Shown: piece after piece, positions 3,505 through 22,849 of the stretch
Position numbering within the stretch: the stretch's first letter is position 1
How the letters are laid out: the number at the start of each line of letters is the position of its first letter
NCBI GenBank assembly: GCA_000708835.1
Contig: DF237244.1
Location: forward strand, 1 to 64,000
Origin: Klebsormidium nitens
Taxonomy: Eukaryota > Plantae > Klebsormidiophyceae
Direction: 5' to 3'
DNA: 64,000 nt
The notes under the pieces: model-generated
Database searches by the model: none
Told to the model about the DNA's origin: nothing
The model's input: only the letters and a program-made list of their open reading frames with translations
Made by a program: the position numbers and the translations under genes

Positions 3505-3540
3505 GAGTCTTCGAGTCTTCGAGTCTTCGAGTCTTCGAGT
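3505..3540. repeat. 8-bp tandem repeat (gagtcttc)x4.5
   Basis: Read directly, about 150 bp upstream of the 567-aa ORF. Confidence 0.9.
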
Positions 3541-3686
3541 GTGCCTGTCTCGTGCAACATATCTACCTACGGTAGGAAGAGCAGCATCACGAGTGGCTCG
3601 GAGGTCAAGTTGTGTAGCAGAATCGTGAGGGGTGCAGCATCCAACCAACATAGCGCTCTTAGCCTCGTGTACAGGCATTCGTAGTA

Positions 3687-5390
3687 ATGTCAACAATGAA
3701 GGAAGCCTTAAAGCAGGTGGCTCTTGAAGTTGTCAAGGGTGCGGCCAATGAAGGCGGGACGCAAGCAGTCAATGCTGCTATTGGGCAGCCTTTGCAACTG
3801 GTGGGAGCAGCGGCGGAGGCTGGCTGTCAGTTAACCCCCTTGGCGCTCTTAAACATGGGCCTTGGGGTTGCCAATCTTGCCGTAGGGGCAACTGGCCTCG
3901 GAGTGGGCATCTTCAATGCTTACCAGGTCCTCAAAATAAAGAAGGGCCTGGGGGTGTTGCAGCTCCAGACGGCAAGCATTGGGGTTAAGATGCAAGCTGA
4001 GCTGGGAAACGTTGCGGCCCAGGTCCAGAGTGTCGGGGCTGACGTGAGCAGGCTTTCTATGCAGCTTGAGGGCCTTGTCATTGCTGAGGGCGCGCAAACC
4101 AGGATTGCGATAAGTGAGATGAAGCATCATCTAGATCTGCGGTTGGATCGAGTTGACCAGCTTTTGGTGTGGGTCGGAAAGTCGGTCGCTGAGAAGCACG
4201 ACGCACTCTCGCAGCAGATTGCAGAGCTGCAAGAGGACATTCATGCTCTACACAGACTCGCCGAAGAAGATGAGCTCCAGTGCAGCATGCTCCGGGTCGC
4301 TACTACATACCGTGACGTGCTGTTTCAGCTGCCGTCTGGGGAAGGGAGTGCTCACGAGTGCCAGGAGCTTCAACGAGTTGCCAAGGACCTGGCGGTCTTG
4401 GCATTGTCCAGATTGAATCGCTATAAGCCGGGAGACCTCTGTCGTGGCCCCTTGATGGTGGCCCGCGTGTATGCTCTTGTGACTGAGGTCGATGCTCGGA
4501 TTCTTGGGGAGATGCAGACGAAGTCCGCCAATTTTGCAGATGGCCTGGTACCTGTGCAGAGTTCCCAGCGACGCCTCTGTGTGCAGAAGCTGGCCGATCT
4601 AGCGCGGGAACTGGAAAAGGAGGCTCACGCGCTTCTTCAGTCCCAGGCATGCTCCCCTTACGCCCTTGCAGTGGACGTTGCTCCCGTCTTGTCGCGGTAT
4701 GCCCTCCTGCACCGAAGTATTGAGGCCAAGCAAGGGTCAGGGGGGCCCATTGTCCTCGAGCTTCAGGAAGCGAGTCTCATTGCTGGGGAGCCACAGGTTG
4801 CTGTGCGCTGGGACGACGGCCTTGATAGCATGCGGGTACTGTGTTCCGCTTTAGCAAGCGGCGAAAGCGGTGATGGCTCTGAGTGGCTCGAGGTGCGGAC
4901 GGTGGCGGATGCCATGTGGTTTGCGGAGTTGTTGGGGAGGCGCGTTGAGGAATGCCTGTTTGCCGATGTGCACCGCATCAGGAGGCGGGTGTTGTTGGAC
5001 GCTCTTGGGGTTCCCGAGACGCTCGGGGATGGCAGCAAGCTGGATGGGACGGGTTTGAATGCACTGAAAGCATTTTCGGTGCTGCGACTGAGGAAAACAA
5101 CAGAAGCTGCAGTAAATGCCGCCTTTGGCAGCTTGGAGACGCCCCTTGTGATGCCGGCATGGACCGAGGTGAGTTTGAACGTCTTGGAGGCAGCAATGTG
5201 TGACAAATATAGGTTGAAGCCTGACATAAGTGAACCATGCAGATTAGCACGCAATGCATTAGTGACACTTCAGAACAGAAGGGTCGAGCTCGTGTTTGGA
5301 TTATTCCGTAAGCTTCAGAGAATGATGGACAGGCTTGGGATGGACTATAGAATGCACGCTCAGGTGGCTCGGATTGAGGGTCCGTTATGA
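3687..5390 (+). CDS. Intronless 567-aa hypothetical protein; Gly/Ala-rich hydrophobic segment followed by coiled coil
   Basis: Long uninterrupted ATG-to-TGA ORF; LALLNMGLGVANLAVGATGLGVGIF then heptad-like helices up to ~aa 200. Confidence 0.8.
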   Translation: MSTMKEALKQVALEVVKGAANEGGTQAVNAAIGQPLQLVGAAAEAGCQLTPLALLNMGLGVANLAVGATGLGVGIFNAYQVLKIKKGLGVLQLQTASIGVKMQAELGNVAAQVQSVGADVSRLSMQLEGLVIAEGAQTRIAISEMKHHLDLRLDRVDQLLVWVGKSVAEKHDALSQQIAELQEDIHALHRLAEEDELQCSMLRVATTYRDVLFQLPSGEGSAHECQELQRVAKDLAVLALSRLNRYKPGDLCRGPLMVARVYALVTEVDARILGEMQTKSANFADGLVPVQSSQRRLCVQKLADLARELEKEAHALLQSQACSPYALAVDVAPVLSRYALLHRSIEAKQGSGGPIVLELQEASLIAGEPQVAVRWDDGLDSMRVLCSALASGESGDGSEWLEVRTVADAMWFAELLGRRVEECLFADVHRIRRRVLLDALGVPETLGDGSKLDGTGLNALKAFSVLRLRKTTEAAVNAAFGSLETPLVMPAWTEVSLNVLEAAMCDKYRLKPDISEPCRLARNALVTLQNRRVELVFGLFRKLQRMMDRLGMDYRMHAQVARIEGPL

Positions 5391-6912
5391 CAGAATCCCC
5401 TTCTTGGGGGAATCATCAACCTGGACTATGAAAGTACAGTAATAATGCACGACTGGAGCAGTGACAACCGGGTCCTCTCCCTGTCGTCTCTTTGTCAGAA
5501 CTTGTCTTGTGCATTCTAGCGTCTCATTCTTTGGCGTCTCCGTTGGTCATCATGGCCATGTGTCTCTGTTTACGCATGTCATTTGTGCAATCATTCTTGT
5601 TGCTGCCAAGGACGGTGCTCCCGGTCTGCTTGCTCTGGTTCCATACTTCCAAGAGATACGTACTAGCTGCATTGCGGCCTAGAATTTGTCGAACAAAGGG
5701 ATGCGAGTGGGTCAGGAAACAGAATAGGGGGCATCTTCGCAAACGGGGGTGTATTACGGTGCTAGAAAGCAAGACGAAACATGAGTGTGACCCTTCCTGA
5801 AGGTGCTCGAAGTGATTGGGAAGGACGGCGACAGCGGTCTTCATGGCACAGCAATAGCGGAAGGTGAGGTTTTCCAACTCAACATGCTGTGCACTGGACT
5901 TCATGGTTCCAAAAGTGGTTAGAAAGTGCTTATTCCTCCATTCAATTGAGTGGTCGGAAACCAGGTTTCTACCTTGAGGCTTCGTACGGCACGATCGCAA
6001 ACAAGAACGATACGATTTGAGAGAGATTGAAAGAATCAGGTTCGATACCAGAATCAACAATGAATGTATGTTTCAAACGGTCGAGCCGACAAAAGTAGCA
6101 TCAAGCGCTCGCACATCTACGGTTCCAGTCAATTCACCTCTGCAAAAATGTCCAGGCTCCTTCTTAAATCGCGGCGAAGGAGGCGGCCGCAAGCGCTAGT
6201 AGCCTTAGCTGGGTGAAGTCTTGATCTAGTTGGTCAAGAAGCACGGTGAATCGGCGGGACGCATTCACTGAGACGAGATTTTTTATCTCTTATTATGGCG
6301 TCCGACAGTGTTGAAAGGTCGGAAAGACTTGGCCTCCGGCGGGATCGTTCTTGACTTTCAGCTTTGAGCAATTGCCAAAAGAATCAGCGGCGAATGCTTC
6401 TATTACGGCCAAAACTCCGAGCCGCCCTCGACGCCGTTTGGATTTTGAAGTGCTTCACGTCAAATGTAACCTGGTTTGACAAGAAAATTTCTCTGAAATT
6501 GTCGCCGAAGTCAACCTTTCGTTTCTGTGGAACAGAGCTTCTTCGGAGGCGCTTTGATGGACACTGCCATGCGACTCTCGAAAAACATTCATGCCCCGTC
6601 CTTTACGCAAAAGAGCTTTGGCGAATCCGATTCTGGAGAGCCTCCTCTTGGAAGTTCCGACCAGAGTCAGGCGAAGCAGCCCCACTGGAACCACTCAATT
6701 TCTTGTTCCGTAAGCTGATTTTTGAGTTGGGTGATCATCATGGTTAACAGCCACGACTTCGATCTTGATTCTTGTGCCGTGTCTAATAAGGAACGAGACT
6801 AGGAGAGGGATTTTGATAGAGGTCGGGCGGACTAAGCCGTTTTTGTGTCCGGGTCTTTTTGGTGCTTGTTAACTTGCACCGTTGATGAAGGTGAACCGGT
6901 CTTCTTGAAGGT

Positions 6913-7781
6913 ATGGGAGTACAAGGCGATGTGCTTCTCTCCTGTGGGGAAAAATCCAAGGGAGACAAGTCGGACGAATACTACAAGCTCGCTCGCCAAC
7001 GTGAATCTACTGGGGATCAGGCGCGGGCCGTTCAACACAACATTCTGGAGGCGGAACATGGAAACCCAAAAGCTGAACTGGAGCTGGGAATGCGGTACCT
7101 GGTTGGAATTGGGGTCGCGGTTGACTTCAAGTTGGCGTTCAAGTGGTTTGAGAGAGCTGCAACTCAGGGGGACGCTGGGGCGCAGTTCATGCTGGCTCGA
7201 TGCTACGAGCTCGGCAATGGAACGAAGCTTGACGTTGCTACAGCTTCGCAATGGTATGCGAGGGCTGTGGACGGTTGGGGCCTCCGCGATCTAGGCCCAT
7301 GGTTCTCGCTGAATCCCAAAGCTGGGCTCGCCAAGGCTCTGCAGCTCGACAGGTTTCGCCCCATGCTGGCGCAGAAAATATTCGGTTTGGCAGTCGTCTA
7401 TCTGAATTCATGTTTCCTCGGGGCCAAGGCGANNNNNNNNNNNNNNNNNNNNNNNNNNNNNNNNNNNNNNNNNNNNNNNNNNNNNNNNNNNNNNNNNNNN
7501 NNNNNNNNNNNNNNNNNNNNNNNNNNNNNNNNNNNNNNNNNNNNNNNNNNNNNNNNNNNNNNNNNNNNNNNNNNNNNNNNNNNNNNNNNNNNNNNNNNNN
7601 NNNNNNNNNNNNNNNNNNNNNNNNNNNNNNNNNNNNNNNNNNNNNNNNNNNNNNNNNNNNNNNNNNNNNNNNNNNNNNNNNNNNNNNGACGCTGGACCTC
7701 GGGAGCAACTCGATCGGGAAGGCGGGGGCGAAGGCGCTGGCGGCCGCCTCCAGGGCGCGGCCTACATTGGTCAGAACCTAA
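6913..7781 (+). CDS. Sel1-like repeat + ribonuclease-inhibitor-type LRR protein (spans assembly gap)
   Basis: Two Sel1 repeats (AELELGMRYLVGIGVAVDFKLAFKWFERAATQG; AQFMLARCYELGNGTKLDVATASQWYARA); after the gap TLDLGSNSIGKAGAKALAAA, then TAA at 7779-7781. Confidence 0.7.
7433..7687. other. Assembly gap (255 N)
   Basis: Run of N; both flanks read as LRR units, suggesting a collapsed LRR array. Confidence 0.98.
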
Positions 7782-8373
7782 AACTTGGTTGGGACGGTTC
7801 TGGCAGAGGTACTGATAGCCGCCCTAGATCGAGGCCTGCGGGCGCAGCGCTGTATTACAGGTTGTCTTGACATGCTAGACCTATTGAGCTATTGATTAGC
7901 TCGATTTGGGATCACTCGTTACCTTGACTATGGATCTTGTTGGCAATCATTTCGCTTCACCTACATCGAGAGTACATGAGTCTCTGTTGTCAAACGCTGT
8001 CAAATGTTGCAATAGCTTACGAGTGATCCAATAGGTGTCCAATTGGCAAGTACAAGGTCATGTAGCTTGAGTAGAATAATGTGCAACCTGTTGTCGTTGT
8101 CTATGTAACTCCTATTCATGCCATCAAGTTTTGTTTGAACTTGAGCTGATCACAAGTTGCATGTTGAGGTTTAGCTGGTTGCGTCATCGGATTGTCATTG
8201 TGGTCAATTATAGTGATTTGGACAGCAATACCATCCAGTCAAGCCTGAAGATTGCGTTTGACGTCCCATACTGCCCGGAATCCTCCCGCCCATGCCCTCC
8301 TGAGCCATGCCACCCGGGAACCGAGGCACCTCTCAATATGACACAAGGGAGTTTTGCATCCGACTTCTAGAAG

Positions 8374-9489
8374 ATGTATATATATTGGAGAAAATCCCCC
8401 CTAGTTGTTTGGCGAGTGCCGCTTAAATTGTGGCATTCGCTGCCAAGTGAACTGTGCATAACGTTCCAGCCCGCATCGATGTACGGCGGAATTCGGGCAT
8501 ACGGGGCGCTAGCAAGCCTGTCCGTGTCAGTCGGGGCGCTGAGGGGGCTCGCGAGCCTGGACCTGAAGAGATGCGAGGCGTTGGCGAGCCTGCCGGAGGC
8601 GGTCACGGTATTGATGGTTAAAGGTGACGCAAGAACGCAATTCAGCTTGGGCTGCTCCTACGCCAGCGACACGGGCGTGGAGAAGGACGAGGCGCGCGCC
8701 GCCGAGCTGTACTCGAAGGCCGCCGAGCGGGGCGACGCGGCGGCGCAGTGCTTCCTGGGCATGTGCTACGCACGAAGTAGGGGTGTCGATAAGGACGGGG
8801 CGAAAGCGGTCAAGTGGATGCGAACGGCTGCTCAGCAAGGGGACCCCGGCATTAAGGCCAATCTGGCGGAGTACTTGATGGAGGGTCTAGGAGGTGCACC
8901 AAACTGGGTCGAGGCGTTGCAATTGTTCCAGTCTTCGTTGGTTTCAAAGGCACCTTCGAAAGTCACGTCAGCTTGGATGCTCTACGGTGGTCAGAATGGA
9001 GTCCAACGGGACAAGCTGAAGGCAAGGACGATGTGCGAGGAGGTCCTGACGACGGAGGATCTGGAAGACCAACTCGAGAGTTGGGAAGCGGTCGGCTGGA
9101 CTTGGCCAGCTGCATTGGAGTGGTTCCGAAGCGAAGTCTGGCGCACGGACGAACCGTCCGGCGAGGCCCTCGAGCGAGGCGAAGGCGAGAGGGGATCGCT
9201 TCGAAAAGCGGAGGGAAATGGGAGAGGAACTCCAGCGCATCTCGAAAAGGGCGCTCTGGCCGGAGCATCCAGACGTGGCGACTCTGCGGAAGAGAAGGGG
9301 GAGTCGCATAGAGGCGGTGCTGCCGTGCGAGCGAGCGCTGGACTTCCGAGAGAAGCGCTGGGCCCAGGGAGCCGGCCGAAACTTGCTACTCTGCGTCGCT
9401 TCTCTCGCGTTGCTATCATCGTTTCTGTCATCGTCGCCATTATTGCTATCGCCGTTGCCGTAAATCAGAAACAAGTCCGCGACACTTAA
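8374..9489 (+). CDS. Truncated LRR-Sel1-TM protein, paralog of the 3' part of the NLR at 11925-15072
   Basis: ~1.5 LRR (GALRGLASLDLKRCEALASLPE), Sel1 repeats, near-identical blocks (GLGGAPNWVEAL; EAVGWTWPAALEWFR), C-terminal VAIIVSVIVAIIAIAVAV; start is ATG 8374 or 8479. Confidence 0.75.
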   Translation: MYIYWRKSPLVVWRVPLKLWHSLPSELCITFQPASMYGGIRAYGALASLSVSVGALRGLASLDLKRCEALASLPEAVTVLMVKGDARTQFSLGCSYASDTGVEKDEARAAELYSKAAERGDAAAQCFLGMCYARSRGVDKDGAKAVKWMRTAAQQGDPGIKANLAEYLMEGLGGAPNWVEALQLFQSSLVSKAPSKVTSAWMLYGGQNGVQRDKLKARTMCEEVLTTEDLEDQLESWEAVGWTWPAALEWFRSEVWRTDEPSGEALERGEGERGSLRKAEGNGRGTPAHLEKGALAGASRRGDSAEEKGESHRGGAAVRASAGLPREALGPGSRPKLATLRRFSRVAIIVSVIVAIIAIAVAVNQKQVRDT

Positions 9490-11924
9490 TGCTTCAGTTT
9501 ACCTCAGCTAGTCATCATCTACATCACTCTCTCCCGTCTTATTTTTTGGGTCGGACAGAATAGCGTCCGGTTTGGGCGACATTTCTCGCGAAAATGGTAA
9601 TATACAGCGACGATATGAATGCCCGACGGTTTAGCAGCGGCGGAGCCTCGCATCTCTGTCAGCTTTTGATAATGCAACTTCTCGTATGACAATGCATTCT
9701 TGCGACCGCACAATGGTCATCACGACGCGGTGCACAGGCTTGTAAAAGAACGCCGCCACCACGTTGCACACCCGGATATCTGTCCCAGCAAGACTCAAAA
9801 CCATGCAAATCTGCTGCTACACCACCGAATGGAACAGCCCAATTGCCTTCAACGACTGTCAACACTCGCAAATGTCTTGAATATAAGTTCATGCATGCAA
9901 TTGGGGCAATTGCATTATGATCACTACTATACTCTTGTGGAGACAAAACGTATGGCCTACAGACGCATAGGGCGCTGTGGATGTTCAATTGTGCGCGCGC
10001 GGATCGCGGTATGTGGGAAGGTGCGCCCGACCCTCATTGCAACCGACCAGGCCGGGCAATGATCGTCCTCATGAGCATGTCGGGACTCTCTTGAATCGAG
10101 GCGTGTGCTAGGCGCCAACAAAATGCTGACGTACGTATTGACATGTGCCATTGAAGGTGACGTCACGCGCGCGCGTGATTGAGCCGCATGCCGGAAAGTC
10201 AACATGCTGTTAGCCGCCCGAGCGCGCTTGCGACTAGACCCGAAACCCCACATTTCTGTCCTTCCGGGCTGTCGTGCCATCTGCAGGTCAACGCACAGTC
10301 GCTGTGATTGGAGTAAATGCGGAAAATCTACGAAAAGTCAAGCGGGTCCCAGACCGCGAGTGGCAATTCAGGCTACCGCTGTTATTTCCTGACACGGTCA
10401 GGAATCGCGATCGTACCGAATCGTGGTGTGGGTGGTCAGTACCGTACGGTAGCCAAGTCGACCGGGACGCGGCGCACGACCAGCCACGATAAAAACCGCC
10501 TGCGTCGATAAAACTGACATCTACCGTACGTCTTATTTGACACTGCCGTTATAAGATTCACAAAACGGTGACCCAAAAGACCGATCCGGGTCGCATTCGG
10601 CACCTATCAAGCTATTTAGGGGCCTGCATCCCGGGCAAGATCGAGTTCGCGTGGACTCCGAACCCCGATTTACCGACCCATGATACCAAGTGGATCGCTG
10701 TCCGTAGCACGGATTGGTCGTTCCGTACGGAAGAACGATGGTTACGGCCTAGGTTGAGCAAATCTTGACCGGGTAAAGACCGAGTTAAGGAAGCGCTTTT
10801 CGGGGCAAACGTATTAAACTGAGTTCGATCTGACGGAAAATAGGCTCGAATTAAAGTCTTGATCGTCACGGACCAACATCGATCAACATCGAAGCGTTTA
10901 GAATTCTAGGTCGAAGCAATCGGACGGTTAAGGACGATGGATCTCAGAAACGCGAAATGAAGATGGTAAAGCGTCATCATCCAGAGTGACAGTGTCTAGA
11001 TTCTAGAGCGTTCCTTAGAGCGTTCCCCTGCTAAGTAGACTTGCAAACACACCGTCAAACAGGCATCATACCACAGATTGAACACATATCTTCGAGGAGG
11101 GGCGGCAACGCAGTGAGCGGACAGCTCTTTCTTATGATGCGCGCATGCGTCCTTGAAGAGAAAGGTGCTCCGTCGACCACCGCGTTTCACCACGCAAATG
11201 CAATTCATTTGTGGGAACAGCCCCTCAAAGGATATGCAGAGTTTACATCAGGTGGGTTACGTCGTGTGTGTTTCTGAGCTTTCTGTGCGCATTATATGCT
11301 CCCACTAAGAGGGAGCGAATGTGAACCGCGCTCTGATCTCCAATCAAGTCCCACAATTGCCAGTACCCAAAGGCTGCTCTGAATCGTGCTGCATTGAGTT
11401 AATTGTATTTCACATTGCTCACATTGCTCCGAGTCAGGTTGAATGTGTGTACTAGGGGCTGGCATGCATTTGACTTGCAGCTGCGGATGATTCTGGAAGA
11501 CAGCTCCTCAGGATGTAATGCAGAAAGTCTTGAGGCGGGTGTTCTTGCCCGTTAGGCTTCCCTTGCCAGATCTCTTGGATGCTGTCATAGGCCACAGAGG
11601 CTGAAAGTAAACACTTGCCAGCAAGGTAGGCAGACGCCGCCAGATGCTGGCCAGCTAAGGGCTCCAGATCTTAGCTTGTCTCCCTAAGCGAAATCTTACA
11701 CAAGCATCTTGTCGCACGGAAAGCTAGTTTCAGGAAGTTTCCATGATTTATGAGCAGATTGTGGCAGCTTTGGCAGATCTAGAGTATCGTGTCATCGCTG
11801 CTTTTTGCTTCGGGCCCTGGCATTCTACATAGTCGACTCCAGTACCCGCCAGCTCCTTCAAGAGTTCACCTATCGACCATGACTTGATATCTCTCTGCAG
11901 GCGGGCGATTCCATATCAATCAGA

Positions 11925-14900
11925 ATGACTGCTCCGCATAGGGTGGGCAAATATGATGTCTTCATCAGCCACTGCGGCAAGGACTGCAAGAAAGGCTTTG
12001 CGGACCTGCTCAGGGATGACCTTGAGCGGGCTGGGGTTCTGTGCTTCTTTGATGAGCACAGCCTGGAGGTGGGTGATGCTGCCCCAGCAGAGATGCTGAA
12101 GGCCATGGAAGAGGCCACGTATGGGGTCGTTATCCTATCCCCAGGCTTTTGGGAGAGGGAGTGGTGCATGAAGGAACTGGAGACCTTCGTGCGGAGGGGG
12201 AGGTTTGTGCCGGTCTTCTACGAGGGCTTCCAAGCAGTCAGTGCGGCAGCAGAGGCGGCGATGGCAAAACGAGTGTGGAGGGGCTTTCAGCAGTCCAAGT
12301 GGGATGAGGAAGCATATCGGCGGTTGGCCCAAGAAAGCGCCAGCTTCACTGGGATCAGGCTGGAAGAAGAGAGCTGGTGGCTCTCATGTATCCGCAGGGT
12401 CAGGTACGAGGTGCTGAGACTCCTTGGCAAGGTGGGGGGTGGCATTCAGATTTCGGAGGATGAGCTGTTGGTGGGGCAGAAGGAGCATCTGAGGGAGCTT
12501 AAGAGGCTGCTGGGGTTGTCTCAGGAGGGGGTAGCAGGCACCGGTGGAACCCAAGCGGCGGGAGAGGTAGGAATAGTGGGTGTGAAGGGCATGGGCGGGG
12601 TCGGCAAGACTACCATGGCGAAAAAGTTGTACGACGAGCCTGACGTGCGTGAGTGGTTCGCTGGGAACATCTGCTGGTTGAAGGTGGGCCCGAAGCCCAG
12701 CGATGACAAGATCCGGACCTCCAAAGGCAGATCCTCAAGCAGTTGGGCAATGTCGACGAGGATCCTGGGAATCCCGATCGGGGCAGGGAACTGATCCGTC
12801 AAAGGCTTAACGGAAAACGAGTTCTAATCTGCCTGGACGACGTATGGGAGACGGTGTGTATCGAGACCGCGGTCGTCAACGTCAGCGACCTCGCTCTAGG
12901 CAGCCGCATTCTGAAGACGTCCCGGAAGAAGGAGAGCATCGGGGGCCATGTCCACGATCTGGACTCGCTGGATCCGGAACCTGCCTGGGAGCTGTTTTGC
13001 TGGCACGCGTTTGGGGGTAAGATGCCACCGGAGGGTCTCGCCGAGCTGGCGAAGAAGGCGGCAGCGAGGTGCGGAGGTCTGCCTCTGGCCATCAGGGTGC
13101 TGGGCAGGCAGGTGGCCGAGGCGGGGGACAAGAAGAAGCGGCTTGAGGACTTCATTGCCCTTCCCCGCGATGACGACGCCATGATCGACTGCCGAAATAT
13201 AATCAGAACAAGCTATGACAACCTGCCCGTTGAGCCGCGAGGTCTAGGGGACGTCTTCATCCTCGTCGCTGGCGTGTGGCCTCGGAATCCCGAGTTCATG
13301 CAGCATCAGAGAGCCGTCGAGAACTTGGGGGCGGCAGTGTATGGGGACGAGCCTAGAAGCACAAGGTTTAAACTGGCTAGCAAAGCGCTGGAAAAGCTCA
13401 ACAGCCTCTCGCTCGTTGGGCTGAAGGTAAAGGCTTTCGGTTATAGGGGAGACGTCTCGGGAGGCGTCTCGCTTACAGTTCATGATCTAATAGTCGATGT
13501 CGCGGATGGGCTGATTGAAAGGGGGGCCGCAGAGTCTGAACGATTCTACCGTCAGCCTGGGGACAATAGCACGTCAACGCTTCCGCAGCATACAAGCAAA
13601 ATTGAGCATATTTCACTTCATTCGGGTACTATATCCGTCCATCGGGTCAGCGCTGCTCGTTCTATCATCCTCAATAAGGGCTCGCAATTATTGGTCCGTT
13701 CTTGGCACAGGTTGCCTAGCGCATGTAGACTCCTCGTCATCGAGACGGCACAAGTGAACGGGTTTCAAAACCTTCTCGACATCCAGTGTCTGCGAGTACA
13801 AAGGCAGCAAAGCCTGCCAAAGTCGGTGGGGCTGCTGACGGGGCTCACGACCCTGGAACTGAACTTTTGCCGGCTACAGAGCCTGCCGGAGTCGCTCGGG
13901 CGGCTGACGGGGCTGACGAGCCTGAATTTGCGATGGTGCAACAAGCTGCGGAGCCTGCCGGAGTCGGTCGGGCGCTGACGGGGCTGACGAGCCTGGACCT
14001 GCGAGTGCGGGCGCTGCAGAGCCTGCCGGAGTCGGTCGGGGCGCTGACGGGGCTCACGAGCCTGGACCTGCACATTTGCGGGGCGCTAGCGAGCCTGCCG
14101 GAGTCGGTCGGGGCGCTGACGGGGCTGACGAGCCTGGACCTGAACGACTGCCAAGCGCTTCAGGGAGCAAGTCAATATTGGTGGGCCGCAGCAAAAGGCG
14201 AAGCATGGGCGCAGGTCAACCTGGGCGCGTGCTTCTACCACGGCACGTGGGTGGAGAAGGACGAGGCGCGCGCCGCCGAGCTGTACGCGAAGGCCGCCGA
14301 GCAGGGCGACGCGGAGGCGCAGTGCAGACTGGGTAACTGTTATGCAAGAGGCAGGGGCGTCGAGAAGGACGGGGCAATAGCGGTAAAGTGGATGCGAACG
14401 GCTGCTGAGCAGGGGGACCCGGCCATGGTGGCAAATTTGGCGGAGGTTTTGATGGAGGGTCTGGGAGGTGCACCGAATTGGGTCGAGGCGCTGCGACTGT
14501 TCGAGTCGTCATTGAATATATGTGCACCTTCGAAGGTCACATCAGCTTGGATGCTCTGGGGTGGTCGGAATGGAGTTCGACAGGACAGGCTCAAGGCCAA
14601 GACGATGTGCGAGGAGGTCCTGACGACAGAGGATCTGGACGACCAACTCAAGGGTTGGGAAGCAGTCGGCTGGACTTGGCCTGCTGCATTGGAGTGGTTC
14701 CGAGGCGAAGCTTGGCGCGCTGACGAACCGTCCGGCGAGGCCCTCGAGAGAGGCGAAGGCGACAGGGGACTGCATCAAGAAGCAGACGAAAACGGAAGAG
14801 GATCCCTCCACCCTAGACCTGTGGACTTTGGAAAGGGCGCTCTGGCCGAACCATCTGGACGTGCCGAGAATGCGGGAGAGTCGCACGAAAACCCTGCTGC

Positions 14901-15072
14901 TGTGTTATCGAACACTGCACACTCGGGAGAAGCCCTGGGCCCCCGACGCCGGCCGACGTTCGTGATTCTGCAACACATTTCTACCACTGCCGGCATCGTT
15001 GCCATTGCTCTTGGCGTTGTAGCTATTGCCATTGCCGTAAGCGAGACACGCCGACGTTCGTTAAGATTGTGA
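11925..15072 (+). CDS. TIR-NB-ARC-LRR-Sel1-TM NLR-type protein (~1049 aa after repairing two 1-nt frameshifts)
   Basis: TIR (YDVFISHCGKD...WCMKEL); P-loop GMGGVGKTT; kinase-2 LICLDDVW; RNBS-B SRILKTSR; GGLPLA; VHD; 5 LRRs; ~4 Sel1 repeats; TM near the C-terminus. Frameshifts at 12715-12716 and 13970-13972. Confidence 0.88.
13809..14160 (+). repeat. Five tandem 69-72-nt LRR-coding units
   Basis: Scaffold agcctgccggagtcggtcggggcgctgacggggctgacgagcctggacctg repeated with a variable middle. Confidence 0.9.
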
Positions 15073-15394
15073 CAAAAGTAGAACCTTGAAGAGGAGATTT
15101 GTCGGACCTCTATTTTCTATATTATCGATTCCATAGCAACTTGGAGACCCATGACAAGAGTGGGGTATTGAAATCTCTGATGCGGGATCCTTGAAAATGC
15201 CCAAGATAGGATGCTGGAGAAAGAGCGCGGCCTGCAATCGCACATGACATGGTGTGCCATTGTTTTAATTCGGGAGTTACATTCGTCCATTTCATCGTAT
15301 TCAGAAGCCGTCATACATGAGCACATGCGTCGATCACTATTATATGGGCGCGAGGCTTAAGGAAGCGCATGCCACACCATCGTCAAACTTCACC

Positions 15395-16478
15395 ATGTCT
15401 CTCCTCGTCGGTGCCTGGCACCCTCCGAGTCCGGAAGGGTCTCCTCCTCGGAAGATCCACATCTCTGACTACGTTCGCGAAATGAAAGGGAACATCACCT
15501 GCGCTGCCTGTCCGGGGGCTTGATCGCCAAGAGAGGAGCTCTCAAGGTCCACCACTACGCTCACCAAGTAGCATGCACGGCCTATGTCGCGTCCACCGAG
15601 CCCATGACGTCTTGGCACGCCGCATGGCAGGAGATCTGCCTACCGCAACACGTCGAAATACCAGTAGAGGCGACCGTCGCCGGAAGGGAAGCACCGTCCG
15701 ATGCATCGCGGACATCCGCTGTGCGAACGGCACGGTCATCGAGGTCCAGCACAGCGCCATCTCGTCGACCGAGATGCTGAAGAGAGAGGCCGTGCACGAC
15801 GACATCATCTGGGTGGTGGACGCCAGAACACCGCGGTCGTGCAAGAGCGAGGAGTGCCGAGACGAGTCGTGCGACGGCCGTCACATACCGGTGGTGGAGC
15901 GAGTCGCGGGCGATCTGACCAACATGCCTCCAGCTCCTGCCACGTCAGAGTTCGCCATCTTCACCATCGAGGTCAGGGGCCTGAGCTTCCCGTTCGCATC
16001 GAATCGCACCGTGGTCTTCGACACCGCACAAGGCCTCTTCTCGCTGCGACGCCGTCTCGGCCGCAGGGCGTTCCTAGGTGCCAAGGTGGACTCGCGTCGG
16101 TTCTTCGAGACCTACTTCAGCCCCATCAGCGCCTCTTGTACGGACGAACTGGTCGCCCGATACGCAGCGACGTGCGTGGCGTCTGATCCGACCGGGGTCG
16201 AGAAAGCTCAATTCAAGAGATGGGGCTTTGTCTGGCAACCCGGCAAGTGCTCATGGCGGCCTGTAAGCACGCCCGTCGAGCGGGCACCGGAACCTCCACC
16301 GGAGGAAGAGTGCTTCAGAGCAGCACTGTCTCCTTCGGAACCGTCGCGGAACCTTGACGACGCGGAGAGAGGCCCGAGGCTCCACACCGAGCCTAAGAGC
16401 CCGATCACCTTCACCAAAGAAGACACTCCTTCGAGCGTAAACCCTCTACCGGCTGGCGCATCGGAAGATACGTACTAG
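15395..16478 (+). CDS. CoiA-like Zn-finger + PD-(D/E)xK nuclease (~361 aa after repairing two 1-nt frameshifts)
   Basis: CAACPGGLIAKRGALKVHHYAH..C..EPMTSWHAAWQ..E..RCIADIRCANGTVIEVQHSAIS..REAVHDDIIWVVD matches the CoiA pattern. Frameshifts at 15514-15518 and 15686-15688. Confidence 0.78.
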
Positions 16479-16589
16479 TCATGGGCGGCCACGGAAGTAA
16501 AAAAGGGGACCACATGGACGTCGATCTTTTTCGGCCACCACGAGTCTGCCCCTCCGTGTCCAATCTCAGCTCCTTGGGAATCGGAGACC

Positions 16590-16859
16590 ATGAAAAAGAT
16601 TTCCAAGGAGGTTTGGTTGGCACAAGCTATCAACCAGACCGCCCCGCGGACAGCGCAGCCTCAAGTCGACCGTGCGGAGTGGTGGAAGGGCGCAAGACCC
16701 GAAGATATGGAGAGTGCAAAAAGGAAGCGAACCGGCAACAAGGGGGCGTTACCCAGTAAGCGGTCGGCAATAGCCACCATACAAGACAAGGTGGCTTTCC
16801 TCAACCAGGAGAAACCGTACATACAGCGTGCAAGAGATCTAAGGCGGGCCAAGAAGTAG
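16590..16859 (+). CDS. Small basic hypothetical protein (89 aa)
   Basis: ATG-to-TAG ORF, Lys/Arg-rich (KRKR, RRAKK), between the nuclease and helicase genes. Confidence 0.35.
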   Translation: MKKISKEVWLAQAINQTAPRTAQPQVDRAEWWKGARPEDMESAKRKRTGNKGALPSKRSAIATIQDKVAFLNQEKPYIQRARDLRRAKK

Positions 16860-17583
16860 GTGTATCCATGTGAGGGGGTACCGCTTGAGCGCGGCTAGAA
16901 CGTCTAACTAATGTACATACTTACCAAGCCATCAAACTGCAATCCTATACCTGCTTGCTCGATATTCGGACGTGGACCACTAGCATGACATACTACAAGG
17001 ATGCATTCCAGCAATGGCTGTTTGCAAAGCCTGCGGAGTAACTGACTGCGTCTGTACTCATTTAGAAATATGTGAACAGTGGGTACAGAGTCAAGGAGAT
17101 GGATATGTGCAATGAGCATCAATCGAAGAAAGCTTTGTGTGCACTGGTGTTAAACCACATACACAAGCGGCCGGCGGACGATTGTTTTGATGACAAAACG
17201 ATCAAGTGTCCCAAGCTGATGAAATGGTAAGCATCGTTGTCACCAGAGCTTGCAAAGAGCATCACATCAGACGAGGACACACTGAGGGGCTGTCTTGCGT
17301 ATGACGACTTTTTCAAAGAGATTTGTTCGTGACAGCAACAACGGGACTGTAATGCAGAACAGGATCGCTTTGCTCCAGGACAGGCCATACATACAAAGCA
17401 AAAGACTTTGGAAATGGCAAATTGATGTTACCTATAATGTTGACGCATTTATACCGAGCCATAAAAAGACTCTTAACGCAATCATTAAGACCTTACTCAT
17501 GACAAAACTTACTGCAATTCTACTAATTCCCTTTTTGTAATTTCCCTGTAGCTCTACAACTCAACACCATGTGATCGACATAT

Positions 17584-20500
17584 CTAACGCGTATAGTCAC
17601 TCTGAATGCCCACGTACACCTGCGGCCTCTTCCCGTATTCATCCTCAGTCTCCCTCTTCTTCTTCCTGTACCCCTTGTCAGTCATCTGCTTCGTCAAAAC
17701 TTCAGCCGTTATGTCGCGGTCGGACGTAGCGTCCTTGTAATCCTTCAAGAAGGCCATCATAGGAGCCCTCAAGTCCTCTCCGATCGTGCAGTGGTCCTCG
17801 ATAAACTTCTGGAGCTTGTCATTGCTCGCCAGGTACTGATTCAGACTCGCCTGCATCGCATTGGGGGTTTCCCCAAGGCCGCCGCGAGCGTACCAGTCCA
17901 CAGCCCCCCTGACCAAGAACGAAAGAAACTGCTCCAATGATCCCCTCTCCGTCATTTTCGCCTTCAGAGTGAGATCAACCGGTCTGTGCCGAGCGTTTGT
18001 TGGATCAAGCCTCTCTTTGCGGACGTACAGGTTGGGAAAATTGACGTAGATCAGGCGGCGCAGCATAGCCTCCTCCTTGGTGTCACGGATGACTGGAGGG
18101 TGGTTAGTCATGACGATCGGCAGATTCGTGAGCTCGAACTCCTCTAACTGACCGTAAGGCACGCGGCTAGAGATTGTGCCACCCCTGTGACCGATTTTGC
18201 CGAACCTTTGTCAATCTCCTGCCTCTCGTCTGTTTCGTCCGTGATGGTGATGCGCTTGTCCTTCAAAGCTGACAGGTGAGGAGTGGCAGCACCCTTCGAA
18301 GCAGGCCGTTGACCGGCAGACGTCACTATAACGTCATTTGGCATGATGCCAAAGTACGGCCCCAGCAGCTTCTCCAGCATCTCCTTGACCACGCCCTTGC
18401 CGTTGCCTGCAGTAAAAAAACATGTCTCGTCTTGAGGAGTTTTACACCCTTATCGTTCCTGAATCTTTTTTGTCACCGTAAGAGCTCCACCTGCTTGAGA
18501 ATGTAGCACGCAGTAGAAAGTCAGCAGGCATTCGGGACGTAAGGCTGCACTCACCTCCTTTTCCGACAAAGAAGCACAGCTTCTCCTCTCGTGCTGAGCC
18601 GGTGATGCCATACCCAAGCAGCCGTTGGATGTAGTCGATGACGTCCCTGTCTCCGTTAAAGATGTCGTTGAAGAAGCTCTCCACGCTGGGTGCTGGGTAG
18701 TCAAGACCCTGAGCGCAGAACGAAAGCAGATTGAACTCATTTGATGCGTGAGTTGTTTATCCACACTGTCAGCCTTGTGCTCGAAGTCAGTAGCTAGCAA
18801 AAAAGCCATGCTGCCTATCAAAGTGCATCTGCTAAGATAGAAATGCACGATAATGAAGCAGACTTCTTCTCACCTTGTACGCTGTAGTGATAATCTCAGA
18901 GCACATGTACTGGGGGCGGTGGATGTCCAGCTCCCCAGTGCGCAGATCGACCACGCCGTTTTGTGTGTTGAGAATGTCCGGATCCCTGTTGAGCTCGCGC
19001 GCAAAGCCGTCCACGTGCATCTCGCCTGTCAGCACTTTCATCGTACTCTCTACGTCTTTAGAGTAGTTGTAATTCCTGAGCATCTTCTGCTTGCGTTTGA
19101 GACGCGTTATGATTTCCTTGTCACTCGTCCGAGCCATCTCCTCCTCGATCTGCGCATGCAGCCGGCCGTATACGGTGGACAGCTGCTCCATAACCACCAG
19201 GCGCACTCGGCTCTCAGACACGAGTCTAAACACTCTCCCATCCCACATGTACCAGCCTTGGTCTGAGTGCACTAGCCTGCAGAGACGAGTGAGAAAGGGT
19301 CAGACCAACACAGTAGAAGGAGGACAAAAGTGGCCAGTAGCAAAACATCGGCCAACCGAAGAAAGACACGTGGCACATAGGGAACCTGCAACCGGCGGAA
19401 ATCTGTGGGGATGCAGTACAACTTGCCTGAGGCACGGGTACATGTGCGTAAAGATCCGGCTACCGCCTCTGTCCCCCTGGAACGCCCAGTAGTCGACTAA
19501 GCTCTTCTCAAGCTTCTCGTACACGCTCTTGTCGTGAGTCGGATGCACAGCTTCCACAGTGGCGCCGACCATCCGGTCGCGGATAGTGAGCTCTCCGATC
19601 ACAGCCCGCGGGCGGCGCGCGCTGCACTCCGACGAGTTGCACACGTACTCCAGCCGGGTGCCCGTGAGCAGCACCGCGAAGTTGTTAGAACCACGATGAC
19701 GAGCCCCGTACGGGCACGTGCGCTCTCCGTCCACCCGGAACACGAACAGGTTCCCCTTCTTGCGGTCAAAGCGAGAGGTGACGTCCCCATGAGCAGCCAA
19801 ATGCTCCTTGATGCGAGCCAGCACCGCATCGTCCGATCGGTTCAGCGGCTCGCGTAGCCCCTCCATCTCCGTCGGAGCTCGTACGGTCCTGCACAGCAAA
19901 TCCAACAATTACCTAACGATGCGAGAAGACAGCCCTTGACCACTAGGGGCTGCCCAAAAAGGACTAGCAAACGACCTCCTGTCCTCCATGTCAACAATCG
20001 TTCCCGACAATCTGGCCGGACACTTTTCACCCATGCCTCCTAGGATCAGCCCATACGTCTCCGTCTGCGAAATAGATCACCTCACTTGTGTTTGTCTGGA
20101 GGAGGACAGAAGGACAACTAGTGGTTTCATGAATCTAAACCGGAGATTGCCTGGTGTCCTCGGCTGTCCTTGGCCGTCCCAAGCGACACAAGAGGGATTC
20201 GAAAAATGCAGAATCCCCAGTCGATCGATCATGCATGGTCTCACCCAAGGTGCCTCTGGACGAAAGGCTGAGCCTTGGCCGCCACGTACGCACGGGCAGC
20301 CCCCAGGTCGATCTTCTGAAGCGCGCTACTCCGGCGCATGTCGTACACGCCGACCAGGTGATCGCACAGCTTGGGAGAGCTTCCTTCGGCAGGGACGAGC
20401 GGCCTGCCAGAACCCTTCTTGCAAGAACCGAGCATGCGGAAGCAGCGGAACTTGGTGTAAACCCCGCTGTCCCATATCCGCTCGCTCTTTCCATTGCGCT

Positions 20501-22498
20501 CGTAGTCTAGGAACAGGACGCTCTCTGCGAGCTCGCAAGAGGGAGGATTCCGGAGGAAGGCCTCAAAGGACTCCTTGAAGAGCGTGCGCTCCTCGTGATT
20601 CTCCAAGTAGAACCCTTCCAGCACCTCGTGTGCGCTGTGCTTGTACCCACCCTTGGACGCTCCGTGCGCCGTGCTGGTCTGGAAGGACAGGCGGAGGGCC
20701 GATATGCCCAGGACCTGCGTGAGAAAGGCCGCCCGGAGTTCGGCGAATCGAGAGAGGCGCTCTGCGAAGCCTTCGTCGTCCCGCTCCGCAACCGAGTACT
20801 CTATGTCGAAGTAAAGGCGGGTGGGCAGATCCGGGTGCAGCACCTCGTACATTGTCCGCTCGACCGCGTACTCCGCCAGGTGCTCGTCGTACTCCTGCAG
20901 CGTGTCCACGTCGGCGAAGGTGGTGTACCTCTTGGTGGCAGTGTCATCCCGGACGTCGCCGGCTGCCAGGATCTGATGGCCTTGCGCCAGCATGTACGCA
21001 AAGGCCCGCCCCTGAGGGCCAGCCCCCGTTGCCTCACAGGGCCTAGCGAACCAGTGCGTGCCTTGATCGGTCGCGTCGGGGACGACCTGCAGCGAGCAGG
21101 CCAATCAGGACGCGACACGTGGTAACGGGAAGAGCGCGCTCTGGCGGCAGGGGAAGCCAGAAGGACGGCGCGGGGCAGCTAGGGTTGCCAAAACGCACTC
21201 GCGAACCACCTCCTGTCCTCCATGTCAACGAAGAATCCCAACATTCCGGCCGGACGATCTTCGACCATTCCACCCAGGATCCAGACCATCCCACCTGAGA
21301 TGCACCATACCACCCTGACTGTAAAAACCACAACCTTACTTTTGTTGGTTTTCAGAAAGACAGAAGGACAGGTAGTGATTTTCTTAGTCTATTTCGGAAA
21401 TGGCTGACGGCCTCGGTCGTCCATGGGCGTCCCGAGGCTTTCGTACCAGGTGCCTGTGGTGGAAGACAGTCCGATCCGGTGACTTGCTCCTCATTTTTCG
21501 GTTCAACTTGTGGATCCCTAGCCGACACTGACCTGAGACGGGTGGCCCTCCGCTGCAACCTGATCGCGCGAGGTGGCCTCGGTGGGTTCTCCTGCAGCGC
21601 TCTCGGAGGGCGTCCTGAGGCACGACAGGTGCTTCGCGAGCAGCCCCATCTGGGCATCCGACTCCTCTTCGGCATGAGCCCTGTCGGCTGCTGCGTGGCC
21701 GATGGCCCCTTCTCCGCCCCGCACGCTCCCGTCATCGAGGAACTCCCGGAGCGAGCCGGCCGACTCGACCTCCTCGGACCGGACCGACCCATTGTCCGAG
21801 AGCTGGACGTCCTCACCTCTTTCGTCGGAGTTCGCGTCGCTGCCAGAGCTCCCGCCCGCCTGCGCTGCGCCGTCATCATCTGTGCTCTTGCGCTTGACCC
21901 CTCTCCTCCGCTCGACACCGTTTAGGCCAGGGCTGACCTCGGACGTCCGGGCCTGCACGGCACGAGAGCCAATCAGAGGGCGCCACGTGGCGGGATACCA
22001 TGGGCTCGGTGCGGGCGGCCAGGAAGACGGCCCCCTGCAGCTGGGGTCGCCGGAAAGCACTCGCGATTCACCTCCTGTCCCCAACAAAGATTCCCAACAT
22101 ATCGGCCGGACGGTTTCCCAACATCCCCCCCGAGATCCATACCATCCCACCCGAGATGCACCCATATACCACCTTGACTATAAAAACCACAACCTTACTT
22201 TTGTTTGTTTTCAGGAAGACAGGAGGACAGGTAGTGATTCCCTTAATCAATTTCGAAAATGGCTGACGGCATCCGCCGTCCATGGCCGTCCCGGGCTCTG
22301 ATTGACAACTTCGCAGGCCATTCTCTAGCGAGCGGGCGTCAGAGCCGAAAAGCCTATGCTGGAAGGATTTTGCCTGCACCTTACCTGAGGTGGTGATTGG
22401 TCCCCATCGGCAGCCTGGTCATCGTCCCCATGCTGGTCCGAGAAGGTGGGGGCGGCAGGTGAAGGATCCTGCGAAGTGCGGGCCTCGGACGTTCGGGA
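17584..22498 (-). CDS. Intron-containing PrimPol-type AEP primase-Zn finger-D5/SF3 helicase (NCLDV/Polinton-like); first exon unresolved
   Basis: Phase-consistent exons 22498-22385, 21952-21533, 21086-20245, 19888-19427, 19276-18874, 18708-18555, 18406-17584. AEP motifs LYFDIE, KHSAH, WDSGVYTKFRCFRMLGSCK; Zn finger CPYGARHRGSNN..C..C; D5_N LNTQNGVVDLRTGEL; Walker A GKGGNGKG split by an intron; Walker B ITITDE; motif C MTNHPP; Arg finger AMLRRL; 1-nt frameshift at 18182-18185. Confidence 0.9.
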
Positions 22499-22849
22499 CT
22501 GCAGGGCACCGCAGCAATCAGAGAACGACACGTGGCAGGATCGTACGGGCTAGGTTTTAAACGGCCAGGAGGACGGCTTCCAGCACCTGGGGTAGCCGAA
22601 AAGCACTCGCGAACCACCTCCTGTCCTCCACGTCAACGGAGAAAACCAACATTTCGGTGGAACGGTTTCCCACCATTCCACCCAGAATCCGGACCATCCT
22701 ACTGAGTTGCAACCCCCATACCATCTTGTCTGTCAAAAACACCATACTACTTTTGTTTGTTTTCAGGAGGACAGAAGGACAGCTATTGGTTCCGTGAATG
22801 AAAAGTTAGAACGCCAGTGTCTACGGCATGTCTTTTGCCGTCCATGGCA
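19961..22849. repeat. Four copies of a ~230-250-bp intronic repeat (19961-20184, 21195-21437, 22057-22296, 22603-22849)
   Basis: Shared collinear blocks: cacctcctgtcc; (c)ttactttt(g)tt(t/g)gttttcagg/aa..gacag(a/g)aggaca; gtcc(a/t)tggccgtccc. The 19961 copy is the most diverged. Confidence 0.88.

What the first reader, a model, noticed from the sequence alone, without database searches (positions are those of the whole stretch)
11925..15072. Tail-anchored TIR-NB-ARC-LRR-Sel1 NLR
Seen: TIR with the catalytic Glu (WCMKEL), complete NB-ARC motifs, five LRRs, ~4 Sel1 repeats, a low-complexity linker, and a hydrophobic helix with a short basic tail (AGIVAIALGVVAIAIAVSETRRRSLRL*). Established: plant TNLs normally end in LRR/C-JID and are soluble, whereas TPR/Sel1-type sensors are typical of bacterial and fungal STAND receptors. 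Inference: a membrane-tethered, dual-sensor algal NLR with possible NADase signalling, an architecture I do not know from land plants.
Basis: partly seen in the sequence, partly recalled or inferred. Interest (0 to 1): 0.8.

Follow-up and report, generated by a model that had tools for sequence, protein, structure and literature searches.

The report
Known Klebsormidium tail-anchored TIR-NLR, frame-broken
This is gene kfl00295_0030 of the streptophyte alga Klebsormidium nitens, an immune-receptor-like protein (TIR, NB-ARC, LRR, Sel1 repeats, membrane anchor at the very end); the layout is real and conserved in relatives, but a 2019 paper already tabulated it, and this copy has two one-base frame breaks.

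Summary
Window 11925-15072 (+) encodes TIR (catalytic Glu present), a complete NB-ARC, five LRRs, a Sel1-like solenoid, an ~86-residue disordered linker and one C-terminal hydrophobic helix. It is read in three frames because of two 1-nt gaps, at 12714/12715 and in the G-run 13970-13972.

The window is identical to Klebsormidium nitens NIES-2285 scaffold DF237244.1. NCBI annotates a gene at 11925-16478. Andolfo et al. 2019 (S. [quoted passage not shown] The architecture is therefore already known.

New here:
- A related Klebsormidium-like genome (JGI metagenomes) carries tandem arrays of this family. They include uninterrupted ORFs of 1312-1860 aa with the same order of parts and the same tail anchor, so the one-protein reading is right.
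- The TIR-NB-ARC part shows dN/dS of 0.22-0.27, the same as between intact copies.
- The annotated 1161-aa model probably fuses the NLR to a broken neighbouring gene.

Whether this copy is a recent pseudogene or carries 454/Newbler homopolymer errors cannot be decided without reads. No function has been tested. Interest is modest. The best lead lies outside the window: EDS1-type EP-domain ORFs sit head-to-head with these genes in the relative.

The parts
11925..12434 (+). Start codon and TIR domain. The catalytic Glu (residue 84) has its codon at 12174-12176.
   Evidence: Pfam TIR_2 6e-20. ROQ1/RPV1 alignment with the Glu aligned. Coordinates. The NCBI gene model has the same start.
12435..13740 (+). 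NB-ARC domain with winged-helix region. P-loop 12588-12614, Walker B 12818-12847, RNBS-B 12899-12925, GLPL 13073-13105, VHD (MHD-like) 13475-13504.
   Evidence: Pfam NB-ARC. Best solved-structure matches are RPP1 1.5e-20 and ROQ1 5e-20. tblastn mapping against the intact relative. Motif coordinates.
12714..12716 (+). Frame break 1: a 1-nt gap relative to three intact relatives, in a short G-run inside the RNBS-A region.
   Evidence: DNA alignment A1. The reading frame changes from 11925-phase to 12716-phase.
13790..14163 (+). Five leucine-rich repeats of 23-24 residues (69-72 nt units).
   Evidence: Repeat families D3/D4. Pfam LRR_14/LRR_4. Beta-strands in the AF2 model.
13970..13972 (+). Frame break 2: this G-run is one base shorter than in the following LRR units. 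It gives a stop at 13976-13978 in the old frame.
   Evidence: Sequence. Repeat alignment D4. ORF table.
14164..14718 (+). Sel1-like repeat solenoid: three canonical Sel1 hairpins and a conserved degenerate helical cap ending in the invariant W-P-A...W-F-R...W-R motif.
   Evidence: Pfam Sel1 2e-21. AF2 helices 61-244, pLDDT 70-96. Foldseek top hits are bacterial Sel1 proteins, HcpC and SEL1L. Invariant columns in A3.
14719..14976 (+). Low-complexity Gly/Ala/Glu/Arg/Pro-rich linker of about 86 residues.
   Evidence: Composition. AF2 pLDDT below 50 over residues 252-341.
14977..15072 (+). Tail anchor: a hydrophobic helix of about 22 residues (14977-15042), a 9-residue basic tail (15043-15069), and the stop at 15070-15072.
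   Evidence: Kyte-Doolittle 19-residue mean 2.48, the only segment above 1.6. Six family members keep the position and hydrophobicity while the sequence diverges. P0104 shares the same stop.
8374..9489 (+). Truncated paralogue: LRR, Sel1, cap, linker and tail anchor only, with no TIR or NB-ARC. It forms the last part of gene model KFL_002950020.
   Evidence: BLASTP 63% identity, 4e-131. dN/dS 0.54. Its sequence is contained in P0375.
15395..16478 (+). Neighbouring nuclease-like gene. It is broken by a 1-nt deletion and a 5-nt insertion relative to an intact 269-aa orthologue. The NCBI model 11925-16478 joins it to the NLR.
   Evidence: tblastn in three frames. DNA alignment A2. Gene table.

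Best explanation
The locus is kfl00295_0030 (NCBI gene 11925-16478 on DF237244.1) of Klebsormidium nitens NIES-2285. It is the only full-length copy in this window. By the seven-gene list of Andolfo et al., it is the only TIR-NB-LRR-Sel1-TM gene of that strain.

It belongs to a Klebsormidium family of intronless, tandemly arrayed TNL-type STAND receptors that end in a fixed cassette: LRRs, a Sel1-like solenoid, a helical cap, a disordered linker and a C-terminal transmembrane helix.

Shown:
- the domain order;
- intact catalytic and nucleotide-switch motifs;
- purifying selection on TIR-NB-ARC;
- conservation of the tail anchor across paralogues.

Inferred mechanism:
- As a tail-anchored protein, the whole receptor faces the cytosol. 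It hangs from a membrane surface on a flexible tether about 86 residues long.
- Ligand binding, most likely on the variable LRR array, releases the NB-ARC switch and the receptor oligomerises in the plane of the membrane.
- The TIR domains then pair into NADase sites that deplete NAD+ or make nucleotide signals.
- The Sel1 array more probably acts as a spacer or docking scaffold than as a second sensor.

The copy in this assembly is interrupted by two 1-nt gaps. I lean slightly (about 55:45) to a real, recent inactivation over sequencing error. The published 'full-length' protein must rest on model introns that skip the breaks.
For: - Identity of the locus: L007 (DF237244.1:1-19489) equals window 1-19489 base for base. 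P0375 = KFL_002950020 is built from window ORFs. S. Table 3 of PMC7145615 gives the architecture of kfl00295_0030.
- Domains and motifs.
- One-ORF relatives with the same layout and tail.
- Relatedness of the source genome: the flank is 92-93% identical over 2 kb.
- Selection: dN/dS is 0.22-0.27 for the window against intact copies, and 0.23-0.32 among intact copies.
- Tail anchor.
- Real decay nearby: a 5-nt insertion in the next gene, a D5-like gene in pieces, and a truncated paralogue upstream.
- Broken copies are common in the family, and the same breaks appear in two independent assemblies.
Against: - No expression, localisation or enzymatic data exist for this gene.
- The two breaks are both -1 in G-runs, in a 454 + Illumina Newbler assembly. 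They may be artefacts.
- Conversely, if they are real, the gene does nothing in this strain.
- The dN/dS test cannot detect a recent inactivation, because dS to the nearest relative is about 0.5.
- The transmembrane call rests on hydropathy and a low-confidence AF2 helix (pLDDT 40-62), not on a dedicated predictor or an experiment.
- No EDS1-family partner is present in the window.
Confidence: 0.7

Rival explanations
1. The gene is intact and functional in K. nitens. Both frame breaks are homopolymer undercalls of the 454/Newbler assembly.
For: - Both breaks are single missing bases in G-runs.
- The assembly used Roche 454 with Newbler.
- There are no in-frame stops in 1047 translated codons once the frames are followed, and all motifs are intact.
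- dN/dS equals that of intact copies.
- Break 2 lies in a tandem LRR repeat where consensus calling is hardest.
Against: - The runs are short (2 and 3 bases as assembled, one base shorter than in the intact relatives and sister repeats). From general knowledge, consensus errors in such runs are uncommon at about 50x with Illumina support.
- The adjacent gene carries a 5-nt insertion that cannot be a homopolymer artefact.
- Nearby long ORFs (3687-5390, 8374-9489, 46047-47237) are unbroken, so the local error rate is not generally high.
- Frame-broken copies are frequent in this family in Illumina-era assemblies.
Confidence: 0.45
2. The pieces are two or three separate genes (TIR-NB, NB-LRR, LRR-Sel1-TM) and not one receptor.
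For: Prokaryote-style gene calls on related contigs often list separate TIR, NB-ARC-LRR and Sel1 ORFs.
Against: - The breaks fall inside the NB-ARC domain and inside an LRR unit. The flanks align base for base with single uninterrupted ORFs of 1081-1860 aa.
- There is no start codon or spacer between the pieces.
Confidence: 0.03
3. The gene is cargo of an integrated virus-like or mobile element and not a host immune receptor, for example a captured decoy.
For: - It is intronless.
- Local GC is 0.59 against about 0.52 for the window.
- It is flanked by a nuclease-like gene and a D5_N/AEP primase-helicase.
- In the relative, family copies sit next to DUF8368 and Herpes_ori_bp helicase genes.
Against: - TIR and NB-ARC are closest to a K. 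nitens TNL (42% identity, 2.9e-106) and then to land-plant TNLs.
- Patterns derived from the NB-ARC/LRR piece found no relative in IMG/VR viral contigs. That scan reaches close relatives only.
- Tandem arrays with birth-and-death decay are typical of host NLR clusters.
- The helicase genes next to the relative's copies have no match in the window.
Confidence: 0.1
4. The C-terminal hydrophobic helix is not a membrane anchor but a buried or oligomerisation helix, so the protein is soluble.
For: - The AF2 confidence of the helix is only 40-62.
- Some family tails have short hydrophobic cores of 14-17 residues.
- One intact-looking member (P0107) lacks the tail altogether.
Against: - The position (7-10 residues from the stop), the hydropathy (1.9-3.1) and the basic flank are kept in six tails whose sequences differ.
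- The helix follows a disordered linker of about 86 residues, which is the geometry of tail-anchored proteins.
- Andolfo et al. also predicted a transmembrane region.
Confidence: 0.15

Closest known systems
kfl00295_0030_v1.1 of Klebsormidium flaccidum/nitens, as listed by Andolfo et al. 2019 (PMC7145615, S. Table 3); NCBI gene at DF237244.1:11925-16478
   Same: It is this very locus. It is tabulated as TIR-NB-LRR with TPR (HCP-like; sel1), a transmembrane region and a cytoplasmic domain. The text describes the fusion of NB genes with Sel1-like repeats in K. flaccidum NLR-like genes.
   Different: The paper treats the model as a full-length protein. It does not mention the two frame breaks, the tail-anchor topology or the probable fusion of the model with the next gene. 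The NCBI product is 1161 aa and ends at 16478. Intact relatives end at the stop equivalent to 15072.
Land-plant TNLs with solved resistosomes (ROQ1, RPP1)
   Same: TIR with catalytic Glu, NB-ARC with P-loop/Walker B/GLPL/MHD-like motifs, and a C-terminal LRR of the same 24-residue type. These are the best solved-structure matches.
   Different: There is no C-JID/post-LRR domain. Instead it carries a Sel1 solenoid, a linker and a tail anchor. No EDS1-family gene is known in the host.
Plant TNPs (TIR-NBARC-like-TPR) and bacterial/fungal STAND proteins with TPR/Sel1 arrays
   Same: A TIR plus a STAND NTPase followed by an alpha-solenoid. Family member P0374 even carries kinesin-light-chain-type TPRs between NB-ARC and LRR.
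   Different: It has a canonical NB-ARC and an LRR array before the solenoid. Johanndrees et al. found no TNP orthologue in K. nitens.
Chromochloris zofingiensis CzNLRs and K. nitens kfl00170_0010 (P0120) with predicted transmembrane helices
   Same: These are algal TIR-NB-LRR proteins with predicted membrane association. P0120 is the closest named relative of the TIR-NB-ARC part.
   Different: Their predicted helices are internal and lie within other C-terminal regions (KAP NTPase; a long C-terminal extension in P0120). None is a single helix at the extreme C-terminus after Sel1 repeats.
Tail-anchored innate-immune adaptor MAVS (from general knowledge)
   Same: The geometry matches: an N-terminal signalling domain, a long disordered linker, a single C-terminal transmembrane helix, and signalling by oligomerisation on a membrane surface.
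   Different: There is no sequence or domain homology, and MAVS is an adaptor, not a receptor. This is an analogy only.

Membership tests
Plant-type TNL (TIR-NB-ARC-LRR) | N-terminal TIR domain with the catalytic glutamate | tested here: met
   Pfam TIR_2 6e-20. Glu84 aligns with the ROQ1 catalytic Glu.
Plant-type TNL (TIR-NB-ARC-LRR) | NB-ARC with P-loop, Walker B, GLPL and MHD-type motifs | tested here: met
   Pfam NB-ARC on both pieces. All motifs located. RPP1/ROQ1 are the best PDB hits.
Plant-type TNL (TIR-NB-ARC-LRR) | LRR array C-terminal to NB-ARC | tested here: met
   Five units at 13790-14163.
Plant-type TNL (TIR-NB-ARC-LRR) | C-JID/post-LRR domain after the LRR (typical of angiosperm TNLs) | tested here: not met
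   No PF20160 hit at E<=0.1. Sel1 repeats follow the LRR.
Plant-type TNL (TIR-NB-ARC-LRR) | One uninterrupted coding sequence | tested here: not met
   Two 1-nt frame breaks in this copy. The feature is met in relatives P0104, P0106, P0108 and P0374.
Plant-type TNL (TIR-NB-ARC-LRR) | Signals through EDS1-family proteins | not testable with these tools
   No EP-domain ORF in the window. EP-domain ORFs neighbour family copies in the related genome.
Sel1-like repeat (SLR) proteins | Pfam PF08238 above the gathering score, and an SLR alpha-solenoid fold | tested here: met
   76.1 bits against 30.7. AF2 solenoid. Foldseek top 27 hits are nearly all Sel1/SLR proteins.
Tail-anchored membrane proteins | A single hydrophobic helix within about 30-40 residues of the C-terminus, with no signal peptide and no other TMD | tested here: met
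   The only segment above KD 1.6 is piece-3 residues 338-356 (2.48), 10 residues from the stop. The N-terminus is polar.
Tail-anchored membrane proteins | Post-translational membrane insertion with the N-terminal bulk facing the cytosol | not testable with these tools
   Needs localisation and fractionation experiments.
TNP (TIR-NBARC-like-TPR) | A TPR array directly after a TNP-type NBARC-like domain | tested here: not met
   Canonical NB-ARC followed by LRR and then Sel1. The literature finds no TNP orthologue in K. nitens.
Identity with kfl00295_0030 / the gene after KFL_002950020 | Same scaffold, next gene in order, same start, same domain list | tested here: met
   L007 is identical to the window. 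The gene table gives 3696-9489 (KFL_002950020, P0375) and then 11925-16478 with TIR, NB-ARC and Sel1. S. Table 3 entry. The model's own protein sequence was not seen.

The most novel reading that the evidence does not exclude
Klebsormidium keeps a conserved, membrane-tethered TNL-SLR receptor family that is genetically coupled to small EP-domain proteins. EDS1-type EP ORFs lie head-to-head about 1.4 kb from family copies at two loci of the related genome. On this reading, a TIR-to-EP signalling pair working at a membrane surface would predate seed-plant EDS1. The K. nitens copy would be the last, recently damaged remnant of it in strain NIES-2285.
Probability: 0.12. Interest if true: 0.8.

Novelty: already known. 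Interest (0 to 1): 0.33.

Why it matters
K. nitens is a reference genome for the algal ancestry of land-plant immunity, and its two or three TNLs are cited as the oldest streptophyte TIR-NLRs. Three points are worth knowing:
- This gene is frame-broken in the reference.
- The deposited 1161-aa model is probably chimeric.
- Intact tail-anchored versions exist in a close relative, which gives experimenters usable sequences.

If the tether and NADase activity are confirmed, the family would be a natural example of an NLR that signals from a membrane surface. The neighbouring EP-domain ORFs would make the origin of TIR-EDS1 coupling testable. As a discovery about this window, though, the architecture is already in the literature.

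Tried and rejected
- The exhaustive representatives search with the LRR-Sel1-tail piece was swamped by multi-Sel1 proteins (177,541 hits). It gave almost nothing about the tail. A query without the Sel1 repeats would have been better.
- Exact look-ups of window ORFs 3687-5387, 8374-9486 and 53568-54971 found nothing. The annotated products are spliced models.
- IMG/VR scans with the NB-ARC/LRR piece and with the D5_N piece found no relatives. A viral source is not supported.
- I first suspected a brown-alga or phaeovirus insert, then Chromochloris (whose split gene models are noted by Andolfo et al.). I dropped both once P0375 and L007 identified K. nitens.
- A search for TIR/NB-ARC remnants upstream of the truncated paralogue found none in the window.
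- A search for an EP-domain remnant in the window, down to E=10, found none.
- dN/dS cannot date the inactivation, because dS to the nearest copy is about 0.5.
- I did not build a phylogeny. The placement of K. nitens TNL NB-ARCs is already published (Gao et al. 2018, as cited).
- The window pieces were searched apart. For the codon alignment alone they were joined with NNN (X) at each break.
- Nothing in the window or in the fetched loci was taken for human.
Full report
**What is in the sequence.** Between 11925 and 15072 on the + strand there are three overlapping ORFs in three frames.
- Pfam places TIR_2 (6e-20) and the first part of NB-ARC, with the P-loop, on the first ORF.
- The rest of NB-ARC (9.5e-20) and LRRs fall on the second ORF.
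- LRRs and Sel1 repeats (2e-21, 76 bits against a cut-off of 30.7) fall on the third.
- The TIR-to-P-loop stretch aligns collinearly with ROQ1 (2.9e-14). The Glu of WCMKEL lies on the Glu of the ROQ1 motif WCLEEL.
- The NB-ARC piece matches RPP1 and ROQ1 best among solved structures.
- P-loop, Walker B, RNBS-B, GLPL and an MHD-like VHD are all intact.
- Five 23-24-residue LRR units lie at 13790-14163.
- An AlphaFold2 model of the third piece gives LRR strands and then an alpha-solenoid (residues 61-244, pLDDT 70-96). Its best structural matches are bacterial Sel1 proteins, HcpC and SEL1L. A disordered stretch (252-341) and a terminal helix follow.
- The only segment of the whole protein above the Kyte-Doolittle transmembrane threshold is that helix (2.48), 10 residues from the stop.

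**The two breaks.** Against three uninterrupted relatives, the window lacks one base between 12714 and 12715. It reads GG where the closest-aligning intact copy reads GGG. At 13970-13972 the G-run is one base shorter than at the same position in the two following LRR units. Both breaks sit inside domains (the RNBS-A region and an LRR unit). There is no room for an intron at either site.

**Where the window comes from.** A search with the tail of an intact relative returned NCBI protein KFL_002950020 of Klebsormidium nitens. Its text is made of window ORFs 3687-5390, 6913 onward and 8374-9489. The look-up of that protein returned DF237244.1 (GCA_000708835.1), positions 1-19489. These are identical to window 1-19489.

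The record annotates the next gene at 11925-16478, with a product of 1161 aa carrying TIR, NB-ARC and Sel1. By scaffold and order this is kfl00295_0030.

Andolfo et al. [quoted passage not shown] Their text describes a fusion of NB genes with Sel1-like repeats in K. flaccidum. Later reviews mention K. nitens TIR NLR-like receptors with alternative C-terminal repeats. The architecture is therefore already public, although only as a table row.

**Is it really one protein?** Yes. About 30 close homologues come from two JGI metagenomes (3300060284 and 3300060285). Their contigs share 92-93% identical non-coding flank with the window, so they come from a closely related Klebsormidium-like genome.

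Among them are uninterrupted ORFs of 1621, 1612, 1312 and 1860 aa with the order TIR, NB-ARC, LRR, Sel1, cap, linker, terminal hydrophobic helix. One of them ends with exactly the same last 30 residues and the same stop as the window gene.

LRR and Sel1 numbers vary widely between copies: Pfam counts 2 to 15 significant Sel1 stretches, and the LRR arrays differ several-fold in length. The cap, linker and tail are constant. In P0374 the same cassette is attached to a different TIR-NB-ARC-TPR head. Six tails keep the position, hydropathy (1.9-3.1) and basic flank while their sequences diverge. This argues that the anchor is selected.

**State of this copy.** TIR-NB-ARC dN/dS between the window gene and intact copies is 0.22-0.27. 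This is indistinguishable from intact-against-intact pairs at 0.23-0.32 (pieces joined only with X). No in-frame stop occurs once the frames are followed. The gene was therefore under constraint for nearly all of its history.

The assembly is 454 + Illumina with Newbler, and both breaks are -1 in G-runs. That fits homopolymer undercalls.

Against that reading:
- The runs are short.
- The next gene downstream is broken by a 5-nt insertion as well as a 1-nt deletion relative to an intact orthologue.
- The D5-like primase-helicase beyond it is in pieces.
- The upstream paralogue is a headless fragment.
- Broken copies are frequent in the relative, with identical breaks in two independent assemblies.

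I cannot decide without reads. I lean slightly to a real, recent inactivation.

Either way, the 1161-aa model must skip the breaks with model introns. It runs on into the neighbouring broken gene, whereas relatives stop at the position equivalent to 15072. This last point is an inference, because I did not see the model's sequence.

**Mechanism (inferred).**
- A single C-terminal helix without a signal peptide puts the whole receptor in the cytosol, tethered to a membrane by a disordered linker of about 86 residues.
- By analogy with ROQ1 and RPP1, ligand binding would release the NB-ARC switch. Oligomerisation would then assemble TIR NADase sites.
- The LRRs are the more variable part (dN/dS 0.86 against 0.40 for the Sel1 part between the two window paralogues). 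I take the LRR as the sensor and the consensus-like Sel1 array as spacer or docking scaffold.
- The moderately hydrophobic helix with a basic tail resembles organelle-outer-membrane tail anchors (general knowledge). The target membrane is unknown.

**Rivals.** Separate genes are excluded by the intact ORFs. A mobile-element origin is suggested by the lack of introns, the higher GC and the helicase/nuclease neighbours. However, the domains are closest to K. nitens and land-plant TNLs, and no viral relative was found.

**Outside the finding.** In the related genome, ORFs with a genuine EDS1-type EP domain lie head-to-head about 1.4 kb from family copies at two loci. The support is Pfam 8e-17, and 3.6e-14 to the EP domain of a solved EDS1, including the conserved VEP-D-ANY motif. 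None is in the window. Current literature says that only short EP-like sequences are reported in green algae. This is the most interesting lead.

**Verdict.** The novelty class is already known and the interest is modest.

Noticed in passing
L002:1206-1868 (-); L005:2025-2684 (-); L006:1998-2657 (-): ORFs with an EDS1-type EP domain, with no lipase domain and a hydrophobic N-terminus. Support: Pfam EDS1_EP 8e-17, and 3.6e-14 to the EP domain of a solved EDS1. They lie head-to-head about 1.4 kb upstream of TNL-Sel1 copies in the related Klebsormidium-like genome. The EP domain is regarded as specific to seed plants. None was found in the window.
   Followed up: partly
window 15395-16478 (+): A nuclease-like gene (zinc-ribbon plus CoiA/PD-(D/E)XK-like pattern, judged by eye; no Pfam hit). 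It is broken by a 1-nt deletion and a 5-nt insertion relative to the intact 269-aa ORF at L003:13696-14505. The NCBI gene model 11925-16478 appears to fuse it to the NLR.
   Followed up: partly
window 17584-21104 (-): A D5-like primase-helicase (D5_N 1.2e-17; weak AEP_C962R) split over at least four ORF pieces. It is annotated as one 1018-aa product. It may be a remnant of a virus-like or mobile element next to the NLR.
   Followed up: partly
window 3696-9489 (+): Gene model KFL_002950020 (1012 aa) joins three parts: a 567-aa ORF of unknown function with a glycine-zipper-like hydrophobic N-terminus, a Sel1 ORF that runs into the 255-N assembly gap (7433-7687), and the headless LRR-Sel1-tail-anchor paralogue. 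It is probably a chimeric model.
   Followed up: no
P0374 (JGI, 1860 aa): A different TIR-NB-ARC head with kinesin-light-chain-type TPRs is fused to the same LRR-Sel1-cap-linker-tail-anchor cassette. The C-terminal cassette is therefore shuffled between NLR classes.
   Followed up: no
L003:1892-4295 (-); L005:14746-17059 (-); L001:21742-22175 (-): DUF8368 and Herpes_ori_bp-type helicase genes repeatedly flank the NLR arrays in the related genome. They have no counterpart in the window.
   Followed up: no
window 19954-22845 and 173-663: Dispersed direct repeats of 70-139 nt spaced 0.5-1.4 kb apart lie around 20-23 kb. A repeat at the window start (173-663) matches about four tandem copies of a ~411-nt unit in L001:3524-5108.
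   Followed up: no
window 53568-54974 (-): A 468-aa ORF with an F-box-like N-terminus and RPS2/RPS4-type LRRs of the same 24-residue kind as the NLR. It is distantly similar to the NLR's LRR (32-44% identity).
   Followed up: no
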